From Asterias rubens (taxonomy: Eukaryota), in assembly GCF_902459465.1 (NCBI RefSeq), contig NC_047066.1, forward strand, positions 20,026,001-20,090,000: DNA of 64,000 nucleotides. Direction: 5' to 3'. Under the pieces are notes generated by a model that did no database searches, was not told the origin of the DNA, and saw only the letters and a program-made list of their open reading frames with translations. Made by a program: the position numbers and the translations under genes. Positions 24,201 through 33,766 of the stretch are shown here, piece by piece (the first letter of the stretch is position 1; each line of letters starts with the position of its first letter).

Positions 24201-27200
24201 TTGAGCGTCGCCGGCGTGGAGATCGTGATCTAGACTTCTGTCTTCTCCTGCGAGGAGGGGTTCTTGATCTACCATGAAGAAAACACAAAACATAAAAGTC
24301 AATGACAACTATTAACTCAAACTGGCATGAAAATCTTTGACGACAAGCAAGGGTGTTAAATCACACAGCTTGGAATGGAAATTTCTTTTAAACAGGGGTG
24401 ACAGTCATTGCTGACAAAAACTGGGCTCCAGATCTATAAGACAGCATTTTCGCCTTTTGATAACTCATGAAGTTGTAGATTCCAAATGAGCTTTTGGCAA
24501 CAGTATTCTCAGTGCTAGAGAAGTTCATCAAAGACAATGACTTACTTTATTTTGAGAAAAGTTAAACATTAATTTTGTACCAAGCAGACTGATATTTCTC
24601 GTCTCTGTTTAGATCTTCTTGGGCAAAAAACAATTGTAAGCTTTCTGGACTAGATTTTTATTCGGGAAAATAAAAAAATAAAAATATTATTTACTTACCT
24701 TGACTTTCTACGGCGCCTTGGTGAACGTGACCTCTTTCTGGAGCGAGACCTGGATCTCTTGTGTGACCTCGATCGTGACCTCTTCCTTGACCTAGACCTG
24801 GATTTCCGACGAGGAGGGGACTTGGAGCGAGATCTACGCCTTGACTTTGAGGACTTGCTGCGCTTCGGAGATCTCGAACGAGACCTCCGACGATGTCTCT
24901 TTGGCGATCTACTACGGGATCTGCGGGATTTCTTTGGCGAGAGTGATCTTGATAGGGATCTACGGGCTGACTTCAGCTGCTTCTTTCCAGGCGAGGCCGA
25001 CCTCGATCGAGACTCCCTGGCTCTGGATGATTTGGACTTCCTGTCCTTTTTTGGCGTGAGAGATCTGGATCTCGAATCTCTCTTCCGTCCCTTTGAACGG
25101 GAGCCTCTTTTCGGAGAAAGCGACGCCCTCCGATCACTTCCTGATGACGAAGGTGAGCGAGCAGTCTTAGAGTTGGCCTTCCGGCTTTTCTTGATTCTCC
25201 TTGGCGATAGGGACCGGGATTTGGACGCAGCATGGCGACCGGGGGACGGGGAACGGGATCCTCGCTTCAAGGCATCTTCATCCTCATGGAAACTGGACAC
25301 AGATTTCTTCCTGGAGGAGCTGACTTCATCAGGCCGGAGTGGGGATGACGACGTGACGCTGCTCTCCTGTTGTGGGAAGAATGCTCTTTCAGGGAAATGG
25401 CCCAACAAAACAGTGTTAGTGTTTTCGGAACCAGGCTCTGATGTTACACCATCAGTATGTGTGACACATTTTAAACTGTACCAAAGCTTTTTTTTTAGCA
25501 CTCTGGAAAATACATGTACACATTTGAATCTTGTATGCCTATCATTTAAAGGGAAGGTACATGTTTGGTAATTACTCAAAACAAATATTAACTTAAAAAC
25601 TGACCTGGAACGAGCATTGGAGAGCTGTTGATAGTATAAAACATTAAGAAACGGCTCCCTCTGAAGTAGCATAGATTTTGAAATAGAGCTAAAATAATAA
25701 AAGACTTCTACTTTCTAGCTAGAAGTCTTTTATTTCTATCTGAAAGCACACAAATTCGTCCAACAAGGGTGTTTTTTTATCTCCCAACTCCGATGACAAA
25801 TTGAGCTCAAATTTTCACAGGTTTGCTATTTTATGCATATCTTCAGATACACCAAGTGAGAACACTGGTCTTTTGCAGTTACCAATAGTGTACCTTCCCT
25901 TTAAAAGCAGATCAAGGTTCAAAAAGAAAACAATCATTAGTTTGTCTTTTGGTCAAGTTTAAAATGTGTCATAAAATAGCAAAGATTTGAATTGGTTATT
26001 GTAACTATAAACTTGATGACCAATGGTATCTGTTGAATACATGCTTCCAACTAGGCATACCTGCATACCATCATTAGTTCGTCTGTTGGTCAAGTTTAAA
26101 TTGTGTCATAAAATAGAAAAGATTTGAATTGGTTATTGTAGCTATAAATATGATGACTCATGGCACGTATCTGTCGAATACATGCTTCCTTGAAGTACAT
26201 TGTATCTGTTTGTCTGGGATTCCCAAAAGAAACGGTCTTTTTCCAATTATTACTACAAAATGAACAATCCTCTGAACAAGAGCAATTAAATATTGATGTC
26301 AGTCAGTGTAGATGCTCGCAAACCACATTCAACTCGATGCAAAAAACACCAGGAAACAGTTTGTCCAGGAAACATTTAAACAACATTTGTACACAGATGA
26401 CACTACATGTACAATGTATCTTGATGATGGCACTCCCTCTTTGCTCATTCATACAATACATCAGGAACCCACTAACCGAATGTCACACAGCCAATAATGT
26501 AGAGTTTGCGCAACTTTTTGTTAAAAAAAAAAAATACAAAAACCATGCTCCTTTATTACAGAGTTTGCAATACCACAAAGCGAAACCATTACCACACTGT
26601 TAATGAATGTTTGTTTTTAGATTTTCTTGCACATGTGAACACCTGTTATTTTGGGGTCCAATAAAAAAAAAAAATCAATATTGCCATTTGCTGTTTCACA
26701 AAAAGGTAACTTGGGCCTAAAAATACAAGGCTGTGCGTGACCTCATGACCTCAAACATAAAGGCCTAATACATTGTACTTCATTCTTGTACGGGCAAGCG
26801 GTTGGTCTTCTACACAGGGTACCATTACTAACTTAAGCAAGGACAAGGGGCATGGAGGCAATTGCCCTCATGCCCTCTGAGGCCTACAAGGCTGTGCGTG
26901 ACCTCATGACCTCAAACATAAAGGCCTCATACATTGTAGTTCATTCTCGTAAGGGCAAGCGGTTGGTCTTCTACACAGGGTACCATTGCCAACTCAAGCA
27001 AGGACAAGGGGCATGGAGGCAATTGCCTTCATGCCCTCTGAAGGCTACAAGACTGTGCGTGACCTCATGACCTCAAACATATAGGCCTCATACATTGTAC
27101 TTCATTCTCGTAAGGGCAAGCGGTTGGTCCTCTACACAGGGTACCATTGCCAACTCAAGCAAGGACAAGGGGCATGGAGGCAATTGCCTTCATGCCCTCT

Positions 27201-30200
27201 GAAGGCTACAAGGCTGTGCGTGACCTCATGACCTCAAACATATAGGCCTCATACATTGTACTTCATTCTTGTAAGGGCAGGGCAGTTGGTCCTCTACACG
27301 GGGTACCATTACCAACTCAAGCAAGGACAAGGGGCATGGAGGCAATTGCCTTCATGCCCTCTGACGTATCAGGCCTAAACGTGACCTCAAGTTTACCTAA
27401 GACATGCCTTCAGAGTCAGACATACAGTAACTATCATAAAAATACACAATGAGAAAATAGAATTAGCTGTTTCAAAACTGTTTACCAACCATAAGGACCT
27501 ACATGTACATGTTATGTATGGTATGCAAAAAATTGTTAATGGTTTGACGTTTCGACCATAGCAGAGTTTTCAAGACTCTGCTACGGTTGAAAGTCGGGCC
27601 ATTGACTATTTTTACAAAAAGAACATGTGGCAGATGTAGCTGACCTTACATAATTGTAGCAATTGTCAAGAGTCGTTAGTGTCTTTGTCTGGTCATAAAT
27701 AGCGTATAATAATATTCACCTGATGTGCCATGCTTTGCTTGGGCGGAGCTTCAACGACGGGGTTGCTATCCCGGCGCTTGGATCCAACTGACTCACGGGG
27801 CGGTGAGCCAGGCTGAATAGTATATTGTTGTATATGGCAAAGCGGGTTATCATTTGGACTCATAACATCTGACCCTAACCTGGCTTATAAAGGGCGTTTA
27901 AGAACTACAGTGGGTTTTTGGTCTAATCCTACCCACCCAAACCATCAAACTTCAAAATGTTTTTCTTTTCTTCTTCATTCTGCTGAACTGAGAAAAATAC
28001 TAGCTACAGTAACTGATTATGCTTTAAACTGTACGTGGGATCAGACACACCACCATTATCAGAGTCCAACAGTGTGTCAAGTTAGTTTGGTATTGGATTT
28101 TGTTAGACATGTTAGAGCGACGAAAAATCCAAGTAAATCAATCAAAGAATCAGTAGTCCAACTGACAAATTTCACACAATAGACCTTATGCACATGACGT
28201 CATTTCAGTAGGGCGCCCTCACCTAGAGGTCAAAAGGAGGTTGTTCATTGGCCAATCCTGTGCACCTAGCGTACAAATCTGTGCGTTTTGATTGTTTGGT
28301 CACCGTTTTTCCACTAAGATGGCCGCTGGATGACGTCAATGCATAAGGTCTATAGTAAAGATTGTGTATGACGGCTAGAAATCTAATGTAGGACAGAGAT
28401 TTTCCTATTAATTTTTTTTATTTTTTTAATCATTATCATTCTTATTCAAATTGATGAACCCGTTTTGGATTGGAATAACAACTTGTTCATCCTAGGAATA
28501 ACAAAGATAGAAATGTACAACCCAGCAAAAGATAAATTCAAAAGGTTTAATATTTCATGTGGAACAAATAGCCAATACTTAAACAAAATTAAAAATACAT
28601 TGTTAACATTAGTGTGGACATTGATGGACAGATCCACAAATTTACATGCAAAACTGCATTTGTCATTTTAAACAATTATAACTAACATTGAATACATACT
28701 GTACATGTGCACTTTAAGATATGTGAGGCAGACTTGGTATCGTTTAAAGTAATGAAATAAAAAATGTACAACCTTAGCGTTTCGTCATCTACACACCATG
28801 TGTGTATTTATGCAACCCTGAAAAAGGAAATCTTGGTTGAGTTTGTTGAATTATTTAGTATTAAAATATCTTCAGCATCCATAGATCAAGTCTAGTTTAA
28901 ATATATTATCAGTCATTTCAGTAGATATGTGGATTGTACTGGTCCCAAATTTGAGTATTGAGAGAAAATTCTGCAATAAACAAACCCACTTTGAAATTTG
29001 CACCATATTTTAGTGTGACATTGTACACCAAAGTCGCCCAGACCCATGACGACTTGAAAGGGCAAGGCCATCTCTTTGATGGCAGTCTTTATTTCTACTG
29101 GAATAAATCAAAGGGCACCAATGCAATAACCAAAGGGGCAAGTAGGCGAGTTACCCTCTGTGAAGTATTACTCAGCCCTGGACCAACCTCAGCTTGTCCA
29201 TGAAATAAATTTATTGCCTGTTTTCACACACGACGCAGGAGCGCCTTAGCTCCATTTTCATGTTATATCTTGCTTTCCTGCACTTAGCATTGACAGCCTT
29301 CTTAATGACAGATATTTTCTGACTTGTTGCAGTGGAACCGGGGAACTCCAACTCTGTTTGGTGCAGAATGGCATTCATACGATGTTGATCCAACTGGACA
29401 GTCATAGAGCCGTCCTGAGTCATGGTCTCCCCTCTGAAACTACTCACTGACAACTCTTCAGGTCCGAACAGATGGCCCAAGAGCTCACAGGCATACCGAT
29501 GAGGTTCTACACTCTTGAAGATGGCCTGCTCCATTAGATATTGCCTGATAAGTACTGGATGCTCGGCACCTGATACACCAATCTCAACAAGTGCATCTGA
29601 ATTGGAGGGGGTGGCAGGAGCAACACATGGTCGGGCTCTACCAGGACAAAATGCTGGAAAACCGTCTTTGGCAATTGAGTCTTGTCTGACAGTTTGAATG
29701 CCGGCGGGTTTTGGTCTAATATTTTTTAGGCCAGCCATAGAGTTGGAGTAAATGTAAGTTTCCGTCACACCAGGAACAGAGGCAGGTGGTGGGGAAGTTG
29801 AGTTAAAGAACTGCTGAGGAGTGCCACTTGGAAATTCAGACCCGACCGACTTATTGTATCTGCTTGCACAAATCCCAGTTGGAATCGCTTGAACTGTTCT
29901 ACATGTACTTTGGGAAGCTACAGGGTAAGCATCCACAGTGTTTGGTTTTTGAGCACTCAAGGCAGACAATTGTTGCTGTCTAGTTTTAACTGGTAAACCA
30001 CCATTCGCCTCTAAATCTTGCCTGACAGTACAAACCGCTGTGGGAACTGCTCTTCTTGGCCCAGCCACTATACTGGGAAACAAGTCCGCAGGCACAGCAG
30101 AAGAGGATGGTGGTTGCACACAATTTAGAGGAACATCCTTGAACAAAGTGTCCTGTCGGATGGTGAAAATTCCAGTTGGAGTAATTTGAACCATGTTCCT

Positions 30201-33200
30201 TTGATCAGCCATAATGCCAGAGAATGCAGCCATTTTTTGATGAGGAGATTGAGCAGTTGAACATGGCTGCTCAGTAACACTCAGAGTGCTACCATTGGCT
30301 TTTGTATCCTGTCTTATAGCACACTTATCACTAGGTATTGTTTCAAGGGTTGTACTTGAGCCAGGCGGAAAGCTGTTGAAGGCTTCCATGGCCATAGGAG
30401 AGGAGGCTGTCGAGTGATTCTCAAAGACCTGAAACTCTGAATATGCCGAATCATCCTCAACCTCTTCCTTCTTTATGTCACAGATTGCCATCGGCTCAAA
30501 TTGTGACGCAGCACTAGAGCCACCATCCTCCATACCGAGGGCGGTGTCTAAACCATAGTTATCATCAGAGCTGGCGTTTTTTTGTATGGACTCAACCCGC
30601 TGGGTGACGCGTGCAATACTCTGAACCATACTGCACTGTAAAGTCTCCAAGCGGTTAAGCTTACTGACAACCTCATCCAGTTTGCATTCCAGCCTGTCCA
30701 GTTGCTCCTGGGGAGAGGAGTCAATATCCATGGTCAGAATCTTGGATTGAGACGGGGTAAGGAGTCCGAGACCGACCAAAGGAAACTTTACAGGCTGTAG
30801 CAGGTCATCATTAGGCTCGAGTGATACTCAGCTGGTATAAGATCACTACAAGCTGAAGAACCTTTTTTTGAATCCATGCAGCAATCGTGACAAACTGTTT
30901 TTATCTCACCTCGAGATAAGAGTGTCAAAAATAGCAACATTCTGGTTCTATTTGAAATATGTCTCTCAAAAACATCATACTTTTACACAATGATCAGATA
31001 GCAGGAAAAGTATCAGTTCATACCACAAACATTTATGACTGAAGAATAGAAGATGACGTTTTGTTTAAAGATTATTTTTTCTTTAAAAAATAAATAATGT
31101 GCATTCCATGATTTGCCAGATTGTGTACAATTCCATCGTGTACTTGATCTACCTCACACACCTTCATGACACTAAAATACTTAAACTATTTGGTCTTTTG
31201 CATATTCTTAACAAAAATGTACTTACGTCTGCACTTCGTGTGCGATCAGGAGTCTGACTAGGACTGTGGCTTGGACTTCTGCTCCGACTCCTACTGAGAC
31301 TTTTGCTTCTATCCCGTTTGTTTCTTTTGGATCCTTTTGGGTAAACAAATTTAGAGTGTTTAAGTAAATTCATAGTAAGACAAATTTAAAATATTTGTTT
31401 GTAAAGAAGAACTGTTATGGTCAAAGGAACTATCATTATTATTGTTAATAACCTACATTCTTTGAACATCAGAGCTTGAAAACATTGCAACTTCATAAGT
31501 TTGTTCATTATTTTGTTCAAAATATTTCACAGCAAGTCATGTTGCATGGCTTATAAAGATGCCATGGTCAACTAACAGCACAGAGTAAGTTGTTTCCGAG
31601 TTTAACATTTCATCCCGACTACTTTTAGTGATTTCCTAGGACTCTTCTTCAAACTGTTGGACTCTGAAATACACTAAATGAAGAATATGAATCATTGAAA
31701 TATTACTAACGTATAATGATATTCCTCCCAAGAGAAGCTAGACTATCAAAACAAAAAATCTAAAACAAAATACACTCATATCATAGCCTGATACTTCACG
31801 AAGGCGATTGCCTCCCTGCCCATGGTCATTGCATTGGTGCCATTGAAAAGCCCCAGTGGAAAATTGCAATTTCCTCATAGGGTACCCTTTATTATTGAAG
31901 AAAGTGTTCAGGCCTGTTTGACACTTACCACCAGGTGATCTTCGTCGTTCTCTAGAATGTGACCGACTGTATCTCCGCTTCTTATCCCGTGACCTTGAGC
32001 GACTCCGCTTCCGTCTGGATCCTGATGCATAGTTCCGACGATTCTTTGGTGTTCTGGATCGAGAGCGACGTCGACGCTTTGGTGTTCTAGATCGAGACCT
32101 CTTACGTCGCCTTGGTGTCCGGGACCTTGACCTCCTGGGGGATCGGGATCTTGAACGCCTCTTCCTCTTTGGTGTTCTGGACCGGGAGCGTTTTTTCTTT
32201 TTGGGTGTTCTGGACCTTCTTCGTTTTGGGGACGAGGATCTTGAACGTCTGCGTCTTGATGATTTCGAATGTTTTGGTGATCTTGACCGTGAGCGAGATG
32301 TGGCTGCTGAACTGGACCGAGAGCGAGATTTTCTCTCTTTGACCAGCTCCTCAGATGTAACTTCATCCTTTTTTGTTGCTGTCATGATTTCGCGCTGGTC
32401 GAGAGTACTACCAGTAGAGTCAATTACAGCCACTGGTATCTTTGTTTGAACTGAGTTATTAGTGTCTACTTCAACGAGCTCAACAGCAGTAAGTATAGAA
32501 TTCCCGGCACCGCTACTGCTAGTTTGCTTTTGCTGTGAAGTCACCTTTAATCTCTTGTCTCGAATCTACGAAAAGAAAATTAAAACATGGTTGAAACTCC
32601 CACAAAAAACTTCTTAGGAAATATTTGATAAACATTGAGTATTTCAAGTACCAGTAACAATGAACATGTAGGCCTAAATTCTGAACAAGTCCTGGCAATC
32701 TGACATATTTTAAACCACGTTCTTTATTCAATCTAAATTTACACTAGGTTTAATGAATGTATGGTGCTCATTCAAATAGTAGTAAGTAGTGAGTAAATCA
32801 TTCATAATGTACTCTTCCAAAAATCAAAATTCCCTCCATTTCATTTATGAGACAAAGTTCATTCATTTTGTTAACCAGAATCAATAACAATAACAGAAAA
32901 ATATGTGTAACCAAAAGTGCATTTTATTAATTGATTTCATAATTTTACAGCGCTTGATTGCATATTACTCACAATGGACTCACTTACAATTTGAGAACTT
33001 TCGGTATCCTGCCACCACTTTTTCACTCATCTTTACAAAAAGGAATTTCATTTCATAACAAATGAAAAAGTGGTGGCAGGATTATGGGATACAGAAAGGT
33101 TTCCAACACTTACTTGCCTTGCCCCTAGGCCTAGCCCTCATCGGCAAAACTTTCCAAAGGTTCAATAAAAGAAAGTCACACCCGGTTGGTTTCAAAATAA

Positions 33201-33766
33201 ACACAAAAATAACAATTTTTCCCGCAAAAAAAGTCTAATTCAAAACCCAAAACAAAACTAAGAAACATAAAAAAGGACCCAGTCCAGTGACATATGCCTC
33301 TCCCATTTGCTAAACCAGCAGCCCACCTCCAACACAGAAACGCGAAACCAAAATCTTGGCACTCATAGTCATAACAAACTCTAAAACAACAAAATATTTG
33401 TGATATTTACTTTTTTTTTTACAAAAAATCTGTTAAATTATTCATCACATGCACCGCACGTAACCCCGTACCGTTAACCGTACTACAATGGTAAAGCGCC
33501 CTCAATCGGCAATAACAAACAAATTACAAACGGCTCCTAAAATTATAAAAAGCCTTTATTTTTACCGTTTTCATTTTTTCTTGAATAAAGCATAATTGTG
33601 ACTAGTTTGCATATTTTCTGTTCAGTCATTGAATGTTAGAATAATTGAAACAATGTTCACTACTTACCCGTTTCAACATATCTTCATTTAGAGCGTGAAA
33701 ACCAGGTGAATTTTCACCACTTTTTGTTTCACTCGAATCGCTGATGTAGCCAGAGATCCCGTCCAT
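21234..33766 (-). CDS. RSRC2: Arginine/serine-rich coiled-coil protein 2, about 787 aa, 9 coding exons
   Basis: Exons 33766-33668, 32565-31929, 31333-31227, 25366-24699, 24268-24200, 23711-23479, 22862-22618, 22009-21883, 21412-21234 (2364 nt, phases consistent). Diagnostic segments: AQEALARRLERAKKL, AKVLAQTGISMPKYYNPLTVNP..RKRKLLW, and the SMAP-type C-terminus KFRRLMGIK..FHQLDQEYQIARVKTHTQRSFGLGF. The 5' exon chain is less certain than the 3' chain. Confidence 0.88.
22960..23070 (-). mobile_element. tRNA-derived SINE head fragment
   Basis: Reverse complement reads ggctttgccttctgccg..cagtcagttcgagggcacacgcacactc..tcttcagagcttgagtctggtgcgctagat; shares the cagagcttgagtc and actag segments with the 49894-50140 SINE family. 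Confidence 0.45.
23175..23351 (-). mobile_element. CAGGCCTG-ended MITE family (related copies near 20520-20670, 29020-29175, 31785-31917, 58965-59130)
   Basis: Shared body ggcatggaggc.at.gccttcgttgcctccgtgaagtat.aggcctg and aaagggca..ggca; the 31785-31917 copy has both (c/t)agcctga and caggcctg ends. No TSD resolved. Confidence 0.6.
25550..25900 (-). mobile_element. Kolobok-like TTAA MITE in RSRC2 intron 3
   Basis: TIRs AGGGAAGGTACA / TGTACCTTCCCT; TTAA at 25546-25549 and 25901-25904. Confidence 0.8.
26724..27363. repeat. Tandem array of 4 x ~161 bp containing a MITE terminus
   Basis: Units start at 26724, 26885, 27046 and 27207 (tac.ag.ctgtgcgtgacctcatgacctcaaac..). Each ends with caaggggcatggaggcaattgcc.tcatgccctctga, and the array is followed by cgtatcaggcct, the end of the CAGGCCTG MITE. 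Confidence 0.9.
28180..28352. mobile_element. TA-flanked small TIR element
   Basis: TAGACCTTATGCA...TGCATAAGGTCTA terminal inverted repeats with internal tgacgtca motifs on both arms. Confidence 0.7.
29211..30731 (-). CDS. Intronless N-terminal coiled-coil + C-terminal BEN-domain protein, 506 aa, nested in RSRC2 intron 3 on the same strand
   Basis: Uninterrupted 1521-nt ORF with strong Kozak ACC-ATG-G at 30731. N-terminal heptads QLDRLECKLDEVVSKLNRLETLQCSMVQSIARVTQRVESIQ. BEN signature RYACELLGHLFGPEELSVSSFRG...LDQHRMNAILHQTELEFPG...ISVIKKAVNAKCRKAR (~29265-29500). The stop codon overlaps an AATAAA. Confidence 0.85.
   Translation of the reverse strand: MDIDSSPQEQLDRLECKLDEVVSKLNRLETLQCSMVQSIARVTQRVESIQKNASSDDNYGLDTALGMEDGGSSAASQFEPMAICDIKKEEVEDDSAYSEFQVFENHSTASSPMAMEAFNSFPPGSSTTLETIPSDKCAIRQDTKANGSTLSVTEQPCSTAQSPHQKMAAFSGIMADQRNMVQITPTGIFTIRQDTLFKDVPLNCVQPPSSSAVPADLFPSIVAGPRRAVPTAVCTVRQDLEANGGLPVKTRQQQLSALSAQKPNTVDAYPVASQSTCRTVQAIPTGICASRYNKSVGSEFPSGTPQQFFNSTSPPPASVPGVTETYIYSNSMAGLKNIRPKPAGIQTVRQDSIAKDGFPAFCPGRARPCVAPATPSNSDALVEIGVSGAEHPVLIRQYLMEQAIFKSVEPHRYACELLGHLFGPEELSVSSFRGETMTQDGSMTVQLDQHRMNAILHQTELEFPGSTATSQKISVIKKAVNAKCRKARYNMKMELRRSCVVCENRQ

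What the first reader, a model, noticed from the sequence alone, without database searches (positions are those of the whole stretch)
29211..31227. Intronless BEN-domain gene nested in RSRC2 intron 3: independent gene or RS-BEN fusion isoform
The sequence shows a 506-aa ORF (coiled coil, repeats, BEN) on the same strand as RSRC2, starting only ~500 nt after the exon-3 donor (31227), with its stop overlapping an AATAAA. The frame stays open for 32 codons upstream of the ATG and contains a phase-0 AG (ctacag|CCT GTA AAG, ~30795). That phase matches the end of RSRC2 exon 3, so splicing there would fuse the RS-rich N-terminus in frame to the BEN protein. Established knowledge: BEN domains are DNA-binding/chromatin modules (BANP, BEND3, Insensitive), often with N-terminal coiled coils and often linked to mobile-element capture. 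I know of no RSRC2-BEN arrangement. Inference: the locus may produce a splicing-factor-like RSRC2 and a chromatin factor via alternative 3' ends. The acceptor is weak. An upstream ATG (~30878, MDSKKG..) in another frame could instead indicate a frameshifted longer N-terminus.
Basis: partly seen in the sequence, partly recalled or inferred. Interest (0 to 1): 0.7.

Follow-up and report, generated by a model that had tools for sequence, protein, structure and literature searches.

The report
Captured BEN gene inside starfish RSRC2
A 506-codon gene piece for a DNA-binding (BEN) protein, probably of transposon origin, sits in intron 3 of the sea-star RSRC2 gene; it is conserved and transcribed with its host, and public annotation already models it as an RS-BEN fusion, so it is a tidy but not unprecedented case of gene capture.

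Summary
A 506-aa ORF (ATG 30731, stop 29213-29211, minus strand) lies in intron 3 (31226-27813) of the Asterias rubens RSRC2 orthologue. It encodes a six-heptad coiled coil, five ~50-aa repeats and a confirmed C-terminal BEN domain.

It is intact and under purifying selection in A. amurensis: dN/dS is 0.40 overall, and the BEN part is 99.2% identical against 94% for the intron.

The RS-BEN fusion is not new. RefSeq models it in both species (XP_033627105.1, XP_071790485.1).

In four RNA contig sets I saw the canonical exon3-exon4 splice and an unspliced read-through from exon 3 into the ORF. I saw neither fusion junction. The read-through RNA cannot encode a fusion because the RS frame stops after 20 codons.

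The ORF belongs to a BEN family of at least 27 loci in this genome. Half of the 12 paralogs I examined sit head-to-head with a large recurring ORF, and one lies between perfect 46-nt inverted repeats. Their main exons start at splice acceptors, which fits capture in the manner of a gene trap.

This scan had already noted transposon-borne BEN genes elsewhere in this genome.

Whether the protein is a fusion or a standalone 506-aa product remains open.

The parts
33665..33766 (-). RSRC2 orthologue, coding part of exon 1 (aa 1-34)
   Evidence: tblastn of P0002 and P0024
31929..32566 (-). RSRC2 exon 2, RS-rich
   Evidence: tblastn. Contig joint to exon 3 in all four runs, and all contigs end at 32566.
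31227..31333 (-). RSRC2 exon 3. It ends in phase 0 (...GCA GAC) before the donor GTAAGT.
   Evidence: Sequence; joints 31333|31929 and 31227|27812
30708..31226 (-). 519-nt (173 x 3) intron piece between the exon 3 donor and the acceptor that RefSeq models. It is retained in the read-through contigs. In the RS frame it has a stop after 20 codons and 12 stops in all.
30788..30877 (-). Not conserved as coding.
   Evidence: A. amurensis has TAT>TAA plus a 3-nt insertion.
30680..30830 (-). 151 nt that are 100% identical between the two Asterias species (about 9 changes expected, P about 1e-4). Covers both candidate acceptors, the ATG in an ACCATGG context, and the leader.
30708..30709 (-). Acceptor AG used by the RefSeq fusion models (ctcctctccccag|GAG). 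Phase 0, 13/17 pyrimidines upstream.
   Evidence: Junction TRSAD|EQLDR in P0001 and P0002
29211..30731 (-). 506-codon coiled-coil/repeat/BEN ORF including the stop
30576..30707 (-). Coiled coil, aa 9-52. Hydrophobic a/d positions at residues 11, 14, 18, 21, 25, 28, (31/32), 35, 39, 42, 46 and 49.
   Evidence: Read from the translation. Weak HOOK coiled-coil hit, E = 0.016.
29616..30335 (-). Five degenerate ~50-aa repeats with core P-x-G-I-x-T-[IV]-R-Q-D, in an S/A/P/T-rich linker. dN/dS here is 0.44.
   Evidence: (DNA repeat D1)
29214..29594 (-). BEN domain with flanking helices, aa 380-506. 99.2% identical in A. amurensis.
   Evidence: Pfam 26.2 bits; PDB profile hits; AF2 pLDDT 91 and Foldseek BANP TM 0.71-0.77
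29210..29215 (-). AATAAA overlapping the stop codon
28940..29120 (-). Conserved 3' flank (~98% identical) holding a second AATAAA at 29093-29088. Conservation collapses below ~28940.
27720..27812 (-). RSRC2 exon 4 (31 codons), the canonical splice partner of exon 3
   Evidence: Joint 27812|31227 in X2, X9 and X3

Best explanation
The ORF is the main coding exon of a coiled-coil/BEN gene of the 'BEN-solo' type. It came from a family that in this genome travels on a two-gene DNA transposon bounded by inverted repeats. A copy landed in sense orientation in intron 3 of the RSRC2 orthologue before A. rubens and A. amurensis split. It lost every trace of the transposon and has been kept by selection.

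It has no demonstrated promoter of its own and is transcribed from the RSRC2 transcription unit. Polymerase reads past the exon 3 donor into the intron and through the ORF.

I take the most likely route to protein to be the one RefSeq models. The 519-nt piece between the exon 3 donor and the strong acceptor at 30709-30708 is spliced out. That acceptor sits just before the coiled coil, where family members normally have their own acceptor. Splicing there joins 281 aa of RS-rich RSRC2 N-terminus in frame to coil, repeats and BEN, giving a 779-aa protein. The locus would then yield either canonical RS+SMAP RSRC2 (exon 3 to exon 4) or an RS-domain protein with a dimerising, sequence-specific DNA-binding tail.

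Shown: ORF integrity, BEN fold, selection, nesting, co-transcription with exon 3, the transposon association of the family, and acceptor-led exons in paralogs.
Inferred: transposon origin of this particular copy, use of the fusion splice, DNA binding and dimerisation.

The confidence of 0.5 is for the full statement including the fusion route. That this is a real, selected BEN coding exon nested in RSRC2 and co-transcribed with it I hold at about 0.85.
For: - Gene reality: open frame P about 3e-16. 48 substitutions against ~90 expected at the intron rate (P about 1e-6). Nd/Sd = 28/20 against a neutral fraction of 0.77 (P = 0.003). BEN part has 3 changes in 386 nt (P about 2e-7). The only indel is 15 nt and in frame.
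- BEN.
- Fusion: RefSeq models in two species share one junction. The frames match, since 519 = 173 x 3. The acceptor has 13/17 pyrimidines against 9/17 for canonical exon 4.
- Host-driven transcription: X1 contig of 3697 nt runs exon 2, exon 3, intron piece, ORF and 3' flank. X9 and X3 contigs run from the ORF across the donor into exon 3. Intron 2 has zero depth, so these runs are RNA.
- Family: at least 27 loci. 6 of 12 paralogs have a homologous large ORF head-to-head. Copies are 98-99% identical, and one has perfect 46-nt TIRs around the BEN ORF.
- Gene structure: all four usable paralog exons start at polypyrimidine-AG acceptors.
- Tree: the nested pair sits among clades that hold transposase-neighboured copies.
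Against: - No contig in four RNA runs (two species) shows the 31227|30707 junction, although the canonical junction and the read-through do appear. Contigs drop minor variants: X1 lacks even the canonical junction. So the fusion may be minor or tissue-limited, but it is unproven here.
- I could not see the evidence behind the RefSeq models.
- The ORF has its own ATG in a perfect ACCATGG context, and 100 nt upstream of it is 100% conserved. That fits a standalone gene at least as well.
- In X2 only the ORF and its 3' flank are covered.
- No TIR, target-site duplication or transposase remnant lies in the window.
- The tree is an unresolved polytomy with a long branch (1.67), so transposon origin of this copy is inferred.
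- dN/dS in the shifted +1 frame is 0.48, so the frame-specific signal is modest.
Confidence: 0.5

Rival explanations
1. Independent nested gene. The ORF has its own promoter in intron 3, between exon 3 and ATG 30731, and makes a standalone 506-aa BEN-solo protein. Its continuity with exon 3 in contigs reflects overlapping RSRC2 pre-mRNA or detained-intron RNA, and the RefSeq fusion is a merger artefact or a rare by-product.
For: - The ATG lies in an ACCATGG context 8 codons upstream of the modelled acceptor.
- 30732-30830 is 100% conserved, more than an acceptor or branch site needs.
- X2 covers only 28618-30617, at a depth equal to or above that of the spliced host mRNA.
- No fusion junction appears in the contigs.
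- Typical family members are BEN-solo proteins of ~300 aa.
Against: - There is no TSS evidence.
- No standalone 506-aa protein is in the 15-billion-protein collection.
- The examined paralog exons have no ATG of their own before the coil and are entered by splicing.
- A TSS upstream of 30877 would put a uORF before the ATG.
- Three runs show unbroken RNA from exon 3 into the ORF, while intron 2 is absent.
Confidence: 0.3
2. ZBED6-like expression. The protein is made from the intron-retaining RSRC2 transcript itself, with the BEN ORF translated as a downstream cistron by reinitiation, leaky scanning or an IRES after the truncated 301-codon RS ORF.
For: - The dominant ORF-bearing RNA in the contigs is exon 2, exon 3, retained intron piece and ORF.
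- Precedent: ZBED6 is an intronless ORF in Zc3h11a intron 1, co-expressed as an intron-retaining variant from the shared promoter (PMC2780926).
Against: - ZBED6 sits before the host's coding exons. Here a 301-codon ORF and many ATGs precede the BEN ATG, which makes cap-dependent translation of it very inefficient by established scanning rules.
- No IRES evidence exists.
Confidence: 0.08
3. No protein function. The ORF is a slowly decaying transposon relic, and its RNA coverage is only detention of introns 3 and 4, which is common in RS-domain genes. Its conservation reflects the short divergence time or RNA-level constraints.
For: - In X1 and X9 the rest of intron 3 and part of intron 4 are covered at depths similar to the ORF (78 against 93; 29.9 against 28.3).
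- The middle 325 aa evolve almost at the intron rate (95.5% against 94%), with dN/dS 0.44.
- Only two close species are available.
Against: - A 506-codon frame is intact in both species, and the only indel is in frame.
- BEN is 99.2% and the coil 98.4% identical against 94% for the intron (P about 2e-7).
- Nonsynonymous changes are fewer than expected (P = 0.003).
- The long branch from all paralogs implies long persistence of an open frame.
Confidence: 0.07

Closest known systems
Host-transposase fusion genes born by alternative splicing (e.g. KRABINER; Cosby et al., bioRxiv 10.1101/2020.05.07.082677)
   Same: A mobile-element ORF for a DNA-binding domain lies in a host intron in sense orientation. 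An acceptor sits immediately upstream of the ORF. An in-frame fusion to upstream host exons is modelled as an alternative isoform beside the ancestral host transcript.
   Different: The captured module is the transposon's accessory BEN gene, not its transposase. The host part is an RS domain rather than KRAB, SCAN or BTB. The junction is not confirmed by the RNA I could inspect. The taxon is an echinoderm, not a vertebrate.
ZBED6 in intron 1 of ZC3H11A (PMC2780926)
   Same: A single-copy, intronless, transposon-derived ORF for a DNA-binding protein inside a host intron. It is co-transcribed from the host promoter on an intron-retaining variant.
   Different: The ZBED6 intron precedes the host coding sequence, so ZBED6 is the first ORF. 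Here 301 codons of RS ORF precede it. ZBED6 makes no fusion with its host.
BEN-solo transcription factors (Insv, Bsg25A/Elba1, Elba2, BEND5, BEND6; PMC4281564) and BANP
   Same: A single C-terminal BEN domain is the only known domain. The model superposes on DNA-bound BEN structures (BANP TM 0.71-0.77, Insv, BEND6, Bsg25A). BEN-solo factors bind DNA as homodimers, which fits the N-terminal coil here.
   Different: Only 15-23% identity to solved BEN domains. The five-repeat linker is unique. No orthology to any named BEN gene. DNA binding is untested.
Two-gene TIR transposons with a BEN partner gene in this genome (called Zator in scan notes s1-150185 and s1-150156)
   Same: Same BEN subfamily profile, same coil-linker-BEN layout, and a main exon entered through an acceptor.
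   Different: The RSRC2 copy has no TIRs, no transposase neighbour and no near-identical copies. It is much longer (506 aa against ~290-333) and lies on a long branch. I did not test the Zator assignment.

Membership tests
BEN domain (Pfam PF10523) | Score at or above Pfam's gathering threshold (23.2 bits) | tested here: met
   The whole protein scores 22.8 bits, just below. The isolated aa 380-506 scores 26.2 bits, E = 9e-6, and 15 of 20 aligned relatives match BEN.
BEN domain (Pfam PF10523) | BEN fold as in solved structures | tested here: met
   AF2 model with pLDDT 91. The top 19 Foldseek PDB hits are all BEN domains, led by BANP with TM 0.71-0.77. The profile hits BEND6, BEND3, BANP, Insv and Bsg25A.
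BEN domain (Pfam PF10523) | Sequence-specific DNA binding | not testable with these tools
   Needs DAP-seq, EMSA or similar
BEN-solo architecture | One BEN domain and no other known domain | tested here: met
   Pfam finds only BEN plus a weak coiled-coil hit. The Atlas finds nothing for aa 1-385. This holds for the standalone ORF only; the fusion isoform adds an RS region.
RSRC2 (host gene) | RS-rich N-terminal region plus C-terminal SMAP domain (PF15477), orthologous to vertebrate RSRC2 | tested here: met
   SMAP scores 51.5 bits against a 29.5 cut-off. The C-terminal 236 aa are 43-45% identical over 91% to vertebrate RSRC2, E about 1e-37. Exons are mapped in the window.
Host-mobile-element fusion gene by exon capture | In-frame fusion of host exons to the element-derived ORF in a gene model | tested here: met
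   XP_033627105.1 and XP_071790485.1 have the junction TRSAD|EQLDR. Both sides are phase 0.
Host-mobile-element fusion gene by exon capture | RNA evidence for the fusion junction | tested here: inconclusive
   The junction is not among the joints in contigs of 4 runs. One low-support joint was not shown, and contigs drop rare variants.
Host-mobile-element fusion gene by exon capture | Captured ORF derives from a mobile element, which supplied the acceptor | tested here: inconclusive
   Family members are transposon-borne and their exons start at acceptors. This copy has no element remnants, and the tree is unresolved.
ZBED6-type nested gene | Intronless ORF in a host intron, co-transcribed by intron retention | tested here: met
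   X1 record 7, X9 record 26 and X3 record 19
ZBED6-type nested gene | The nested ORF is the first long ORF of the retained transcript | tested here: not met
   A 301-codon RS ORF precedes it.
Intact DNA transposon at this site | TIRs and a transposase gene flanking the BEN ORF | tested here: not met
   No flanking inverted repeats. No transposase-like match in the window at E below 0.6. No TIR match.

The most novel reading that the evidence does not exclude
RSRC2 in Asterias has captured the accessory BEN gene of a two-gene DNA transposon, not its transposase. Through an alternative terminal exon the locus makes a protein that joins an RS domain of the splicing-factor type to a dimeric, sequence-specific DNA-binding module. 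Such a factor could tether RS-domain interactions to particular genomic sites. This domain pairing and this route of capture have not been described.
Probability: 0.3. Interest if true: 0.6.

Novelty: new member of a known kind. Interest (0 to 1): 0.4.

Why it matters
If the fusion is made, this is an invertebrate example of a host gene gaining a DNA-binding tail from a mobile element by alternative splicing. That mechanism has been documented mainly for transposases in vertebrates. Here the donor would be a transposon's second gene, and the host part an RS domain.

The case also suggests why BEN domains spread so widely. In this genome they ride on transposons as exons led by an acceptor, which makes them natural gene traps.

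In practical terms, the RefSeq name 'serine/arginine repetitive matrix protein 2-like isoform X4' hides both the RSRC2 orthology and the BEN domain. The isoform's key junction still needs read-level confirmation.

Tried and rejected
present in the sequence and in phase 0, but with a weak pyrimidine tract. It is not used by the RefSeq models and not seen in the contigs.
- **Frameshifted longer N-terminus from ATG 30877:** rejected. It is a 29-codon uORF, truncated in A. amurensis, and RNA contigs match the assembly.
- **Genomic DNA contamination as the source of intron coverage:** rejected, because intron 2 has zero depth in all four runs.
- **Retrocopy origin:** no poly(A) tract or target-site duplication. 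Family genes are spliced and their main exon is the homologous unit.
- **Transposon remnants around the ORF:** none found.
- **Ancient echinoderm arrangement:** the crinoid Antedon RSRC2 locus has no BEN ORF.
- **Full-length homologues:** none outside Asterias among 1.84 billion representatives or in the word-indexed 5.8 billion clusters. No own-genome paralogue matches the N-terminal or middle parts. The Atlas feature search on aa 1-385 was blank.
- **Literature on RSRC2 plus BEN:** none.
- **Target-site duplication of the L018 element:** not evident.
- **Pfam family for the recurring head-to-head ORF:** none, so I did not verify the 'Zator' label of the earlier notes.
- **Limits:** Read laying allowed one call and only assembled contigs, so junction counts, transcript ends and strand could not be measured.

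Full report
**Identity of the window.** The window is G000:C5:20026001-20090000 of a 417.6-Mb assembly. Contig C5 is 22,602,731 bases long. That equals the contig length recorded for Asterias rubens XP_033627105.1 (P0002), whose exons match the window. I therefore treat the window as A. rubens.

**Observation.**
- The minus-strand ORF 29211..30779 is real. It gives 522 codons from a TTG, 506 from the ATG at 30731, and 538 stop to stop. The chance of such an open frame at this composition is about 3e-16.
- The stop (29213-29211) lies inside an AATAAA at 29215-29210.
- Exon 3 of the host ends at 31227 before GTAAGT.
- The frame is open for 32 codons upstream of the ATG, and a phase-0 AG sits at 30796-30795.

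**Host gene.**
- The longest A. amurensis product (P0024, 820 aa) maps on the window as exon 1 (coding part 33766-33665), exon 2 (32566-31929), exon 3 (31333-31227) and exon 4 (27812-27720). A large RS exon near 25672-24700 and four C-terminal exons down to 21237 follow.
- It carries SMAP PF15477 at 51.5 bits. Its last 236 aa are 43-45% identical to vertebrate RSRC2, E about 1e-37.
- The host is therefore an RSRC2 orthologue. Intron 3 (31226-27813, 3414 nt) contains the ORF.

**The protein.**
- Residues 9-52 form six uninterrupted heptads with hydrophobic a/d positions, read from the translation. Pfam gives a weak coiled-coil hit.
- Residues ~133-372 hold five degenerate repeats of about 50 aa, with core P-x-G-I-x-T-[IV]-R-Q-D, in an S/A/P/T-rich linker.
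- The C-terminus is a BEN domain. The whole protein scores 22.8 bits, just below the cut-off, but the isolated domain scores 26.2.
- A profile of the domain and 19 relatives hits only BEN structures in the PDB: BEND6, BEND3, BANP, Insv, Bsg25A and NAC1.
- An AF2 model (pLDDT 91) has BEN domains as its top 19 Foldseek matches, led by BANP with TM 0.71-0.77.

**Conservation.**
- The orthologous A. amurensis locus (L008) has the same ORF.
- Identity is 94.0% in the upstream intron piece and 88% in the far 3' flank. It is 96.8% across the ORF: coil 98.4%, middle 95.5% and BEN 99.2%. The only indel is 15 nt and in frame.
- Nei-Gojobori dN/dS is 0.40 overall (Sd 20, Nd 28). It is 0.44 in the middle and 0.13 in the BEN part, the latter from only three changes.
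- Nonsynonymous changes are fewer than expected (binomial P = 0.003). The BEN part has far fewer changes than the intron rate predicts (P about 2e-7).
- The +1 frame gives 0.48, so the frame-specific signal is modest.
- A 151-nt block, 30830-30680, is 100% identical (P about 1e-4). It spans the leader, the ATG and both candidate acceptors.
- The 3' flank down to ~28940, with a second AATAAA at 29093-29088, is also ~98% conserved, and then conservation collapses.

**The fusion is already annotated.**
- The only full-length relatives in 5.8 billion clusters and 1.84 billion representatives are RefSeq models XP_071790485.1 (A. amurensis isoform X3, 774 aa) and XP_033627105.1 (A. rubens 'serine/arginine repetitive matrix protein 2-like isoform X4', 779 aa).
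- Both join ...TRSAD (end of exon 3) to EQLDRLE.... The acceptor is ctcctctccccag|GAG, with AG at 30709-30708 and the exon starting at 30707, which is codon 9 of the ORF.
- The skipped piece is 519 nt = 173 x 3, and both sides are phase 0.
- This acceptor has 13/17 pyrimidines.
- No standalone 506-aa protein is in the collection.

**RNA evidence (assembled contigs of four runs, three of organism A and one of a close relative).**
- The exon 2-exon 3 joint is in all four runs. The canonical exon 3-exon 4 joint is in three.
- Intron 2 has zero depth in all four, so the runs are RNA without DNA carry-over.
- Neither 31227|30707 nor 31227|30794 is listed. One joint with weaker support than the rest was not shown.
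- Instead, X1 record 7 (3697 nt) runs from exon 2, spliced to exon 3, straight through the donor, the 519-nt piece, the ORF and the 3' flank down to 28326. X9 record 26 (28327-31255) and X3 record 19 (28753-31256) also cross the donor unspliced.
- In that RNA the RS frame stops 20 codons after the donor, and 12 stops precede the BEN frame. It would encode a 301-aa RS-only protein and carry the BEN ORF as a downstream cistron.
- Contigs extend 460-890 nt beyond the AATAAA at the stop. X2 ends at 28618, X3 drops at 28753, and X1 and X9 end at a repeat. The signal at the stop is therefore not the main 3' end in these data.
- In X1 and X9 the rest of intron 3 and part of intron 4 are covered at similar depth. 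That fits intron detention.
- In X2 only 28618-30617 is covered, at or above the depth of the spliced host mRNA. That fits a discrete unit.
- Contigs cannot give ends, strand or minor isoforms. X1 lacks even the canonical junction, so absence of the fusion joint is weak evidence.

**Origin.**
- Outside Asterias only the BEN region has relatives, at E between 3.5e-7 and 8e-4. The named ones are Holothuria and Lytechinus proteins.
- The crinoid Antedon RSRC2 locus has no BEN ORF.
- The subfamily profile finds at least 27 loci in this genome, mostly single open frames of 290-333 aa.
- Two unchecked notes of this scan described two-gene 'Zator' transposons with a BEN partner. I tested that lead directly.
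- In 6 of 12 paralog loci a homologous large ORF (up to 657 aa, no Pfam family) lies head-to-head 1-3 kb upstream of the BEN exon.
- Three copies are 98-99% identical. One of them (L018) has perfect 46-nt terminal inverted repeats enclosing an intact 332-aa BEN ORF and an internally deleted partner.
- In all four paralogs inspected, three of them transposase-neighboured, the coil-BEN open frame begins at a strong polypyrimidine-AG acceptor. In the two whose coil is evident (L002, L003) no ATG precedes it.
- These elements are thus built like gene traps: acceptor, then ORF, then 3' end.
- In a maximum-likelihood tree the RSRC2-nested pair sits on a long branch (1.67) in an unresolved polytomy, among clades that hold transposase-neighboured copies.
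- The window has no TIR, target-site duplication or transposase remnant.
- Transposon origin of this copy is a reasonable inference but is not shown. The capture predates the split of the two Asterias species.

**Interpretation.**
- I am about 85% confident that this is a real, selected, probably transposon-derived BEN coding exon nested in RSRC2 and co-transcribed with it.
- The route to protein is open. I put the spliced RS-BEN fusion of RefSeq first, at ~0.5. Its support is two independent annotations, a strong conserved in-phase acceptor at the position where family exons are normally entered, and host-driven transcription.
- A standalone 506-aa product from an internal promoter comes second, at ~0.3. 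Its support is the perfect Kozak ATG, the conserved leader and the X2 coverage pattern.
- ZBED6-like expression from the retained-intron RNA (PMC2780926) is unlikely, because a 301-codon ORF precedes the BEN ORF.
- A functionless relic is unlikely given the conservation pattern.

**Comparison and novelty.**
- The nearest described mechanism is host-transposase fusion by alternative splicing to an acceptor supplied by the transposon (bioRxiv 10.1101/2020.05.07.082677).
- The nearest structural family is the BEN-solo transcription factors and BANP (PMC4281564).
- The differences are the captured module (an accessory BEN gene), the host part (an RS domain) and the taxon.
- The gene model is already public and the mechanism is known, so I class this as a new member of a known kind, of moderate interest.

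Noticed in passing
window 28176-28356: A ~180-bp MITE-like element with 17-nt terminal inverted repeats inside RSRC2 intron 3. RNA contigs pile up on it at very high depth (up to ~1e5) with many alternative joints in all four runs, so the family is abundant in transcripts.
   Followed up: partly
window 27600-27748 and 27813-28204: Contigs in X1, X9 and X3 cross the exon 4 acceptor, and in X1 and X9 the exon 4 donor, unspliced, while intron 2 is clean. Introns 3 and 4 of RSRC2 look selectively retained (detained), as is known for RS-domain genes.
   Followed up: no
L018:5294-9215 (G000:C5:17110393-17114314): A 3.9-kb non-autonomous DNA transposon with perfect 46-nt TIRs, an intact 332-aa coiled-coil/BEN ORF and an internally deleted partner ORF. 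Copies on C15 and C4 are 98-99% identical, which suggests recent activity. No clear target-site duplication was seen.
   Followed up: partly
L011:4449-6071, L017:4818-6788, L015:5060-6208 (minus strands): A recurring large ORF (up to 657 aa) head-to-head with BEN genes. It has no Pfam family, only a weak zf-C3Hc3H hit. It is presumably the transposase that earlier notes call Zator; I did not verify that.
   Followed up: partly
L003, L005 and L006, first ~25 codons of the BEN main exon: A shared acidic serine motif (S-D-S-D-E-D-x-P-L) sits right after the acceptor in three paralogs. It is absent from the RSRC2-nested ORF.
   Followed up: no
window ~30861: A 3-nt insertion (CTT on the plus strand) in the uORF region. 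It is seen in one organism-A RNA run (X1) and in the related species, so it is polymorphic in A. rubens.
   Followed up: no
window 24695-25672 (-) and 24759-25571 (+): The large second RS exon of RSRC2 produces long mirror ORFs on both strands. The plus-strand one is a by-product of the repetitive AGR/CGN codons.
   Followed up: no
L008:1-9503 (A. amurensis locus): The neighbours upstream of RSRC2 in A. amurensis are a HECT ligase gene and a Cgr1-family gene. I did not check the matching synteny in the window.
   Followed up: no
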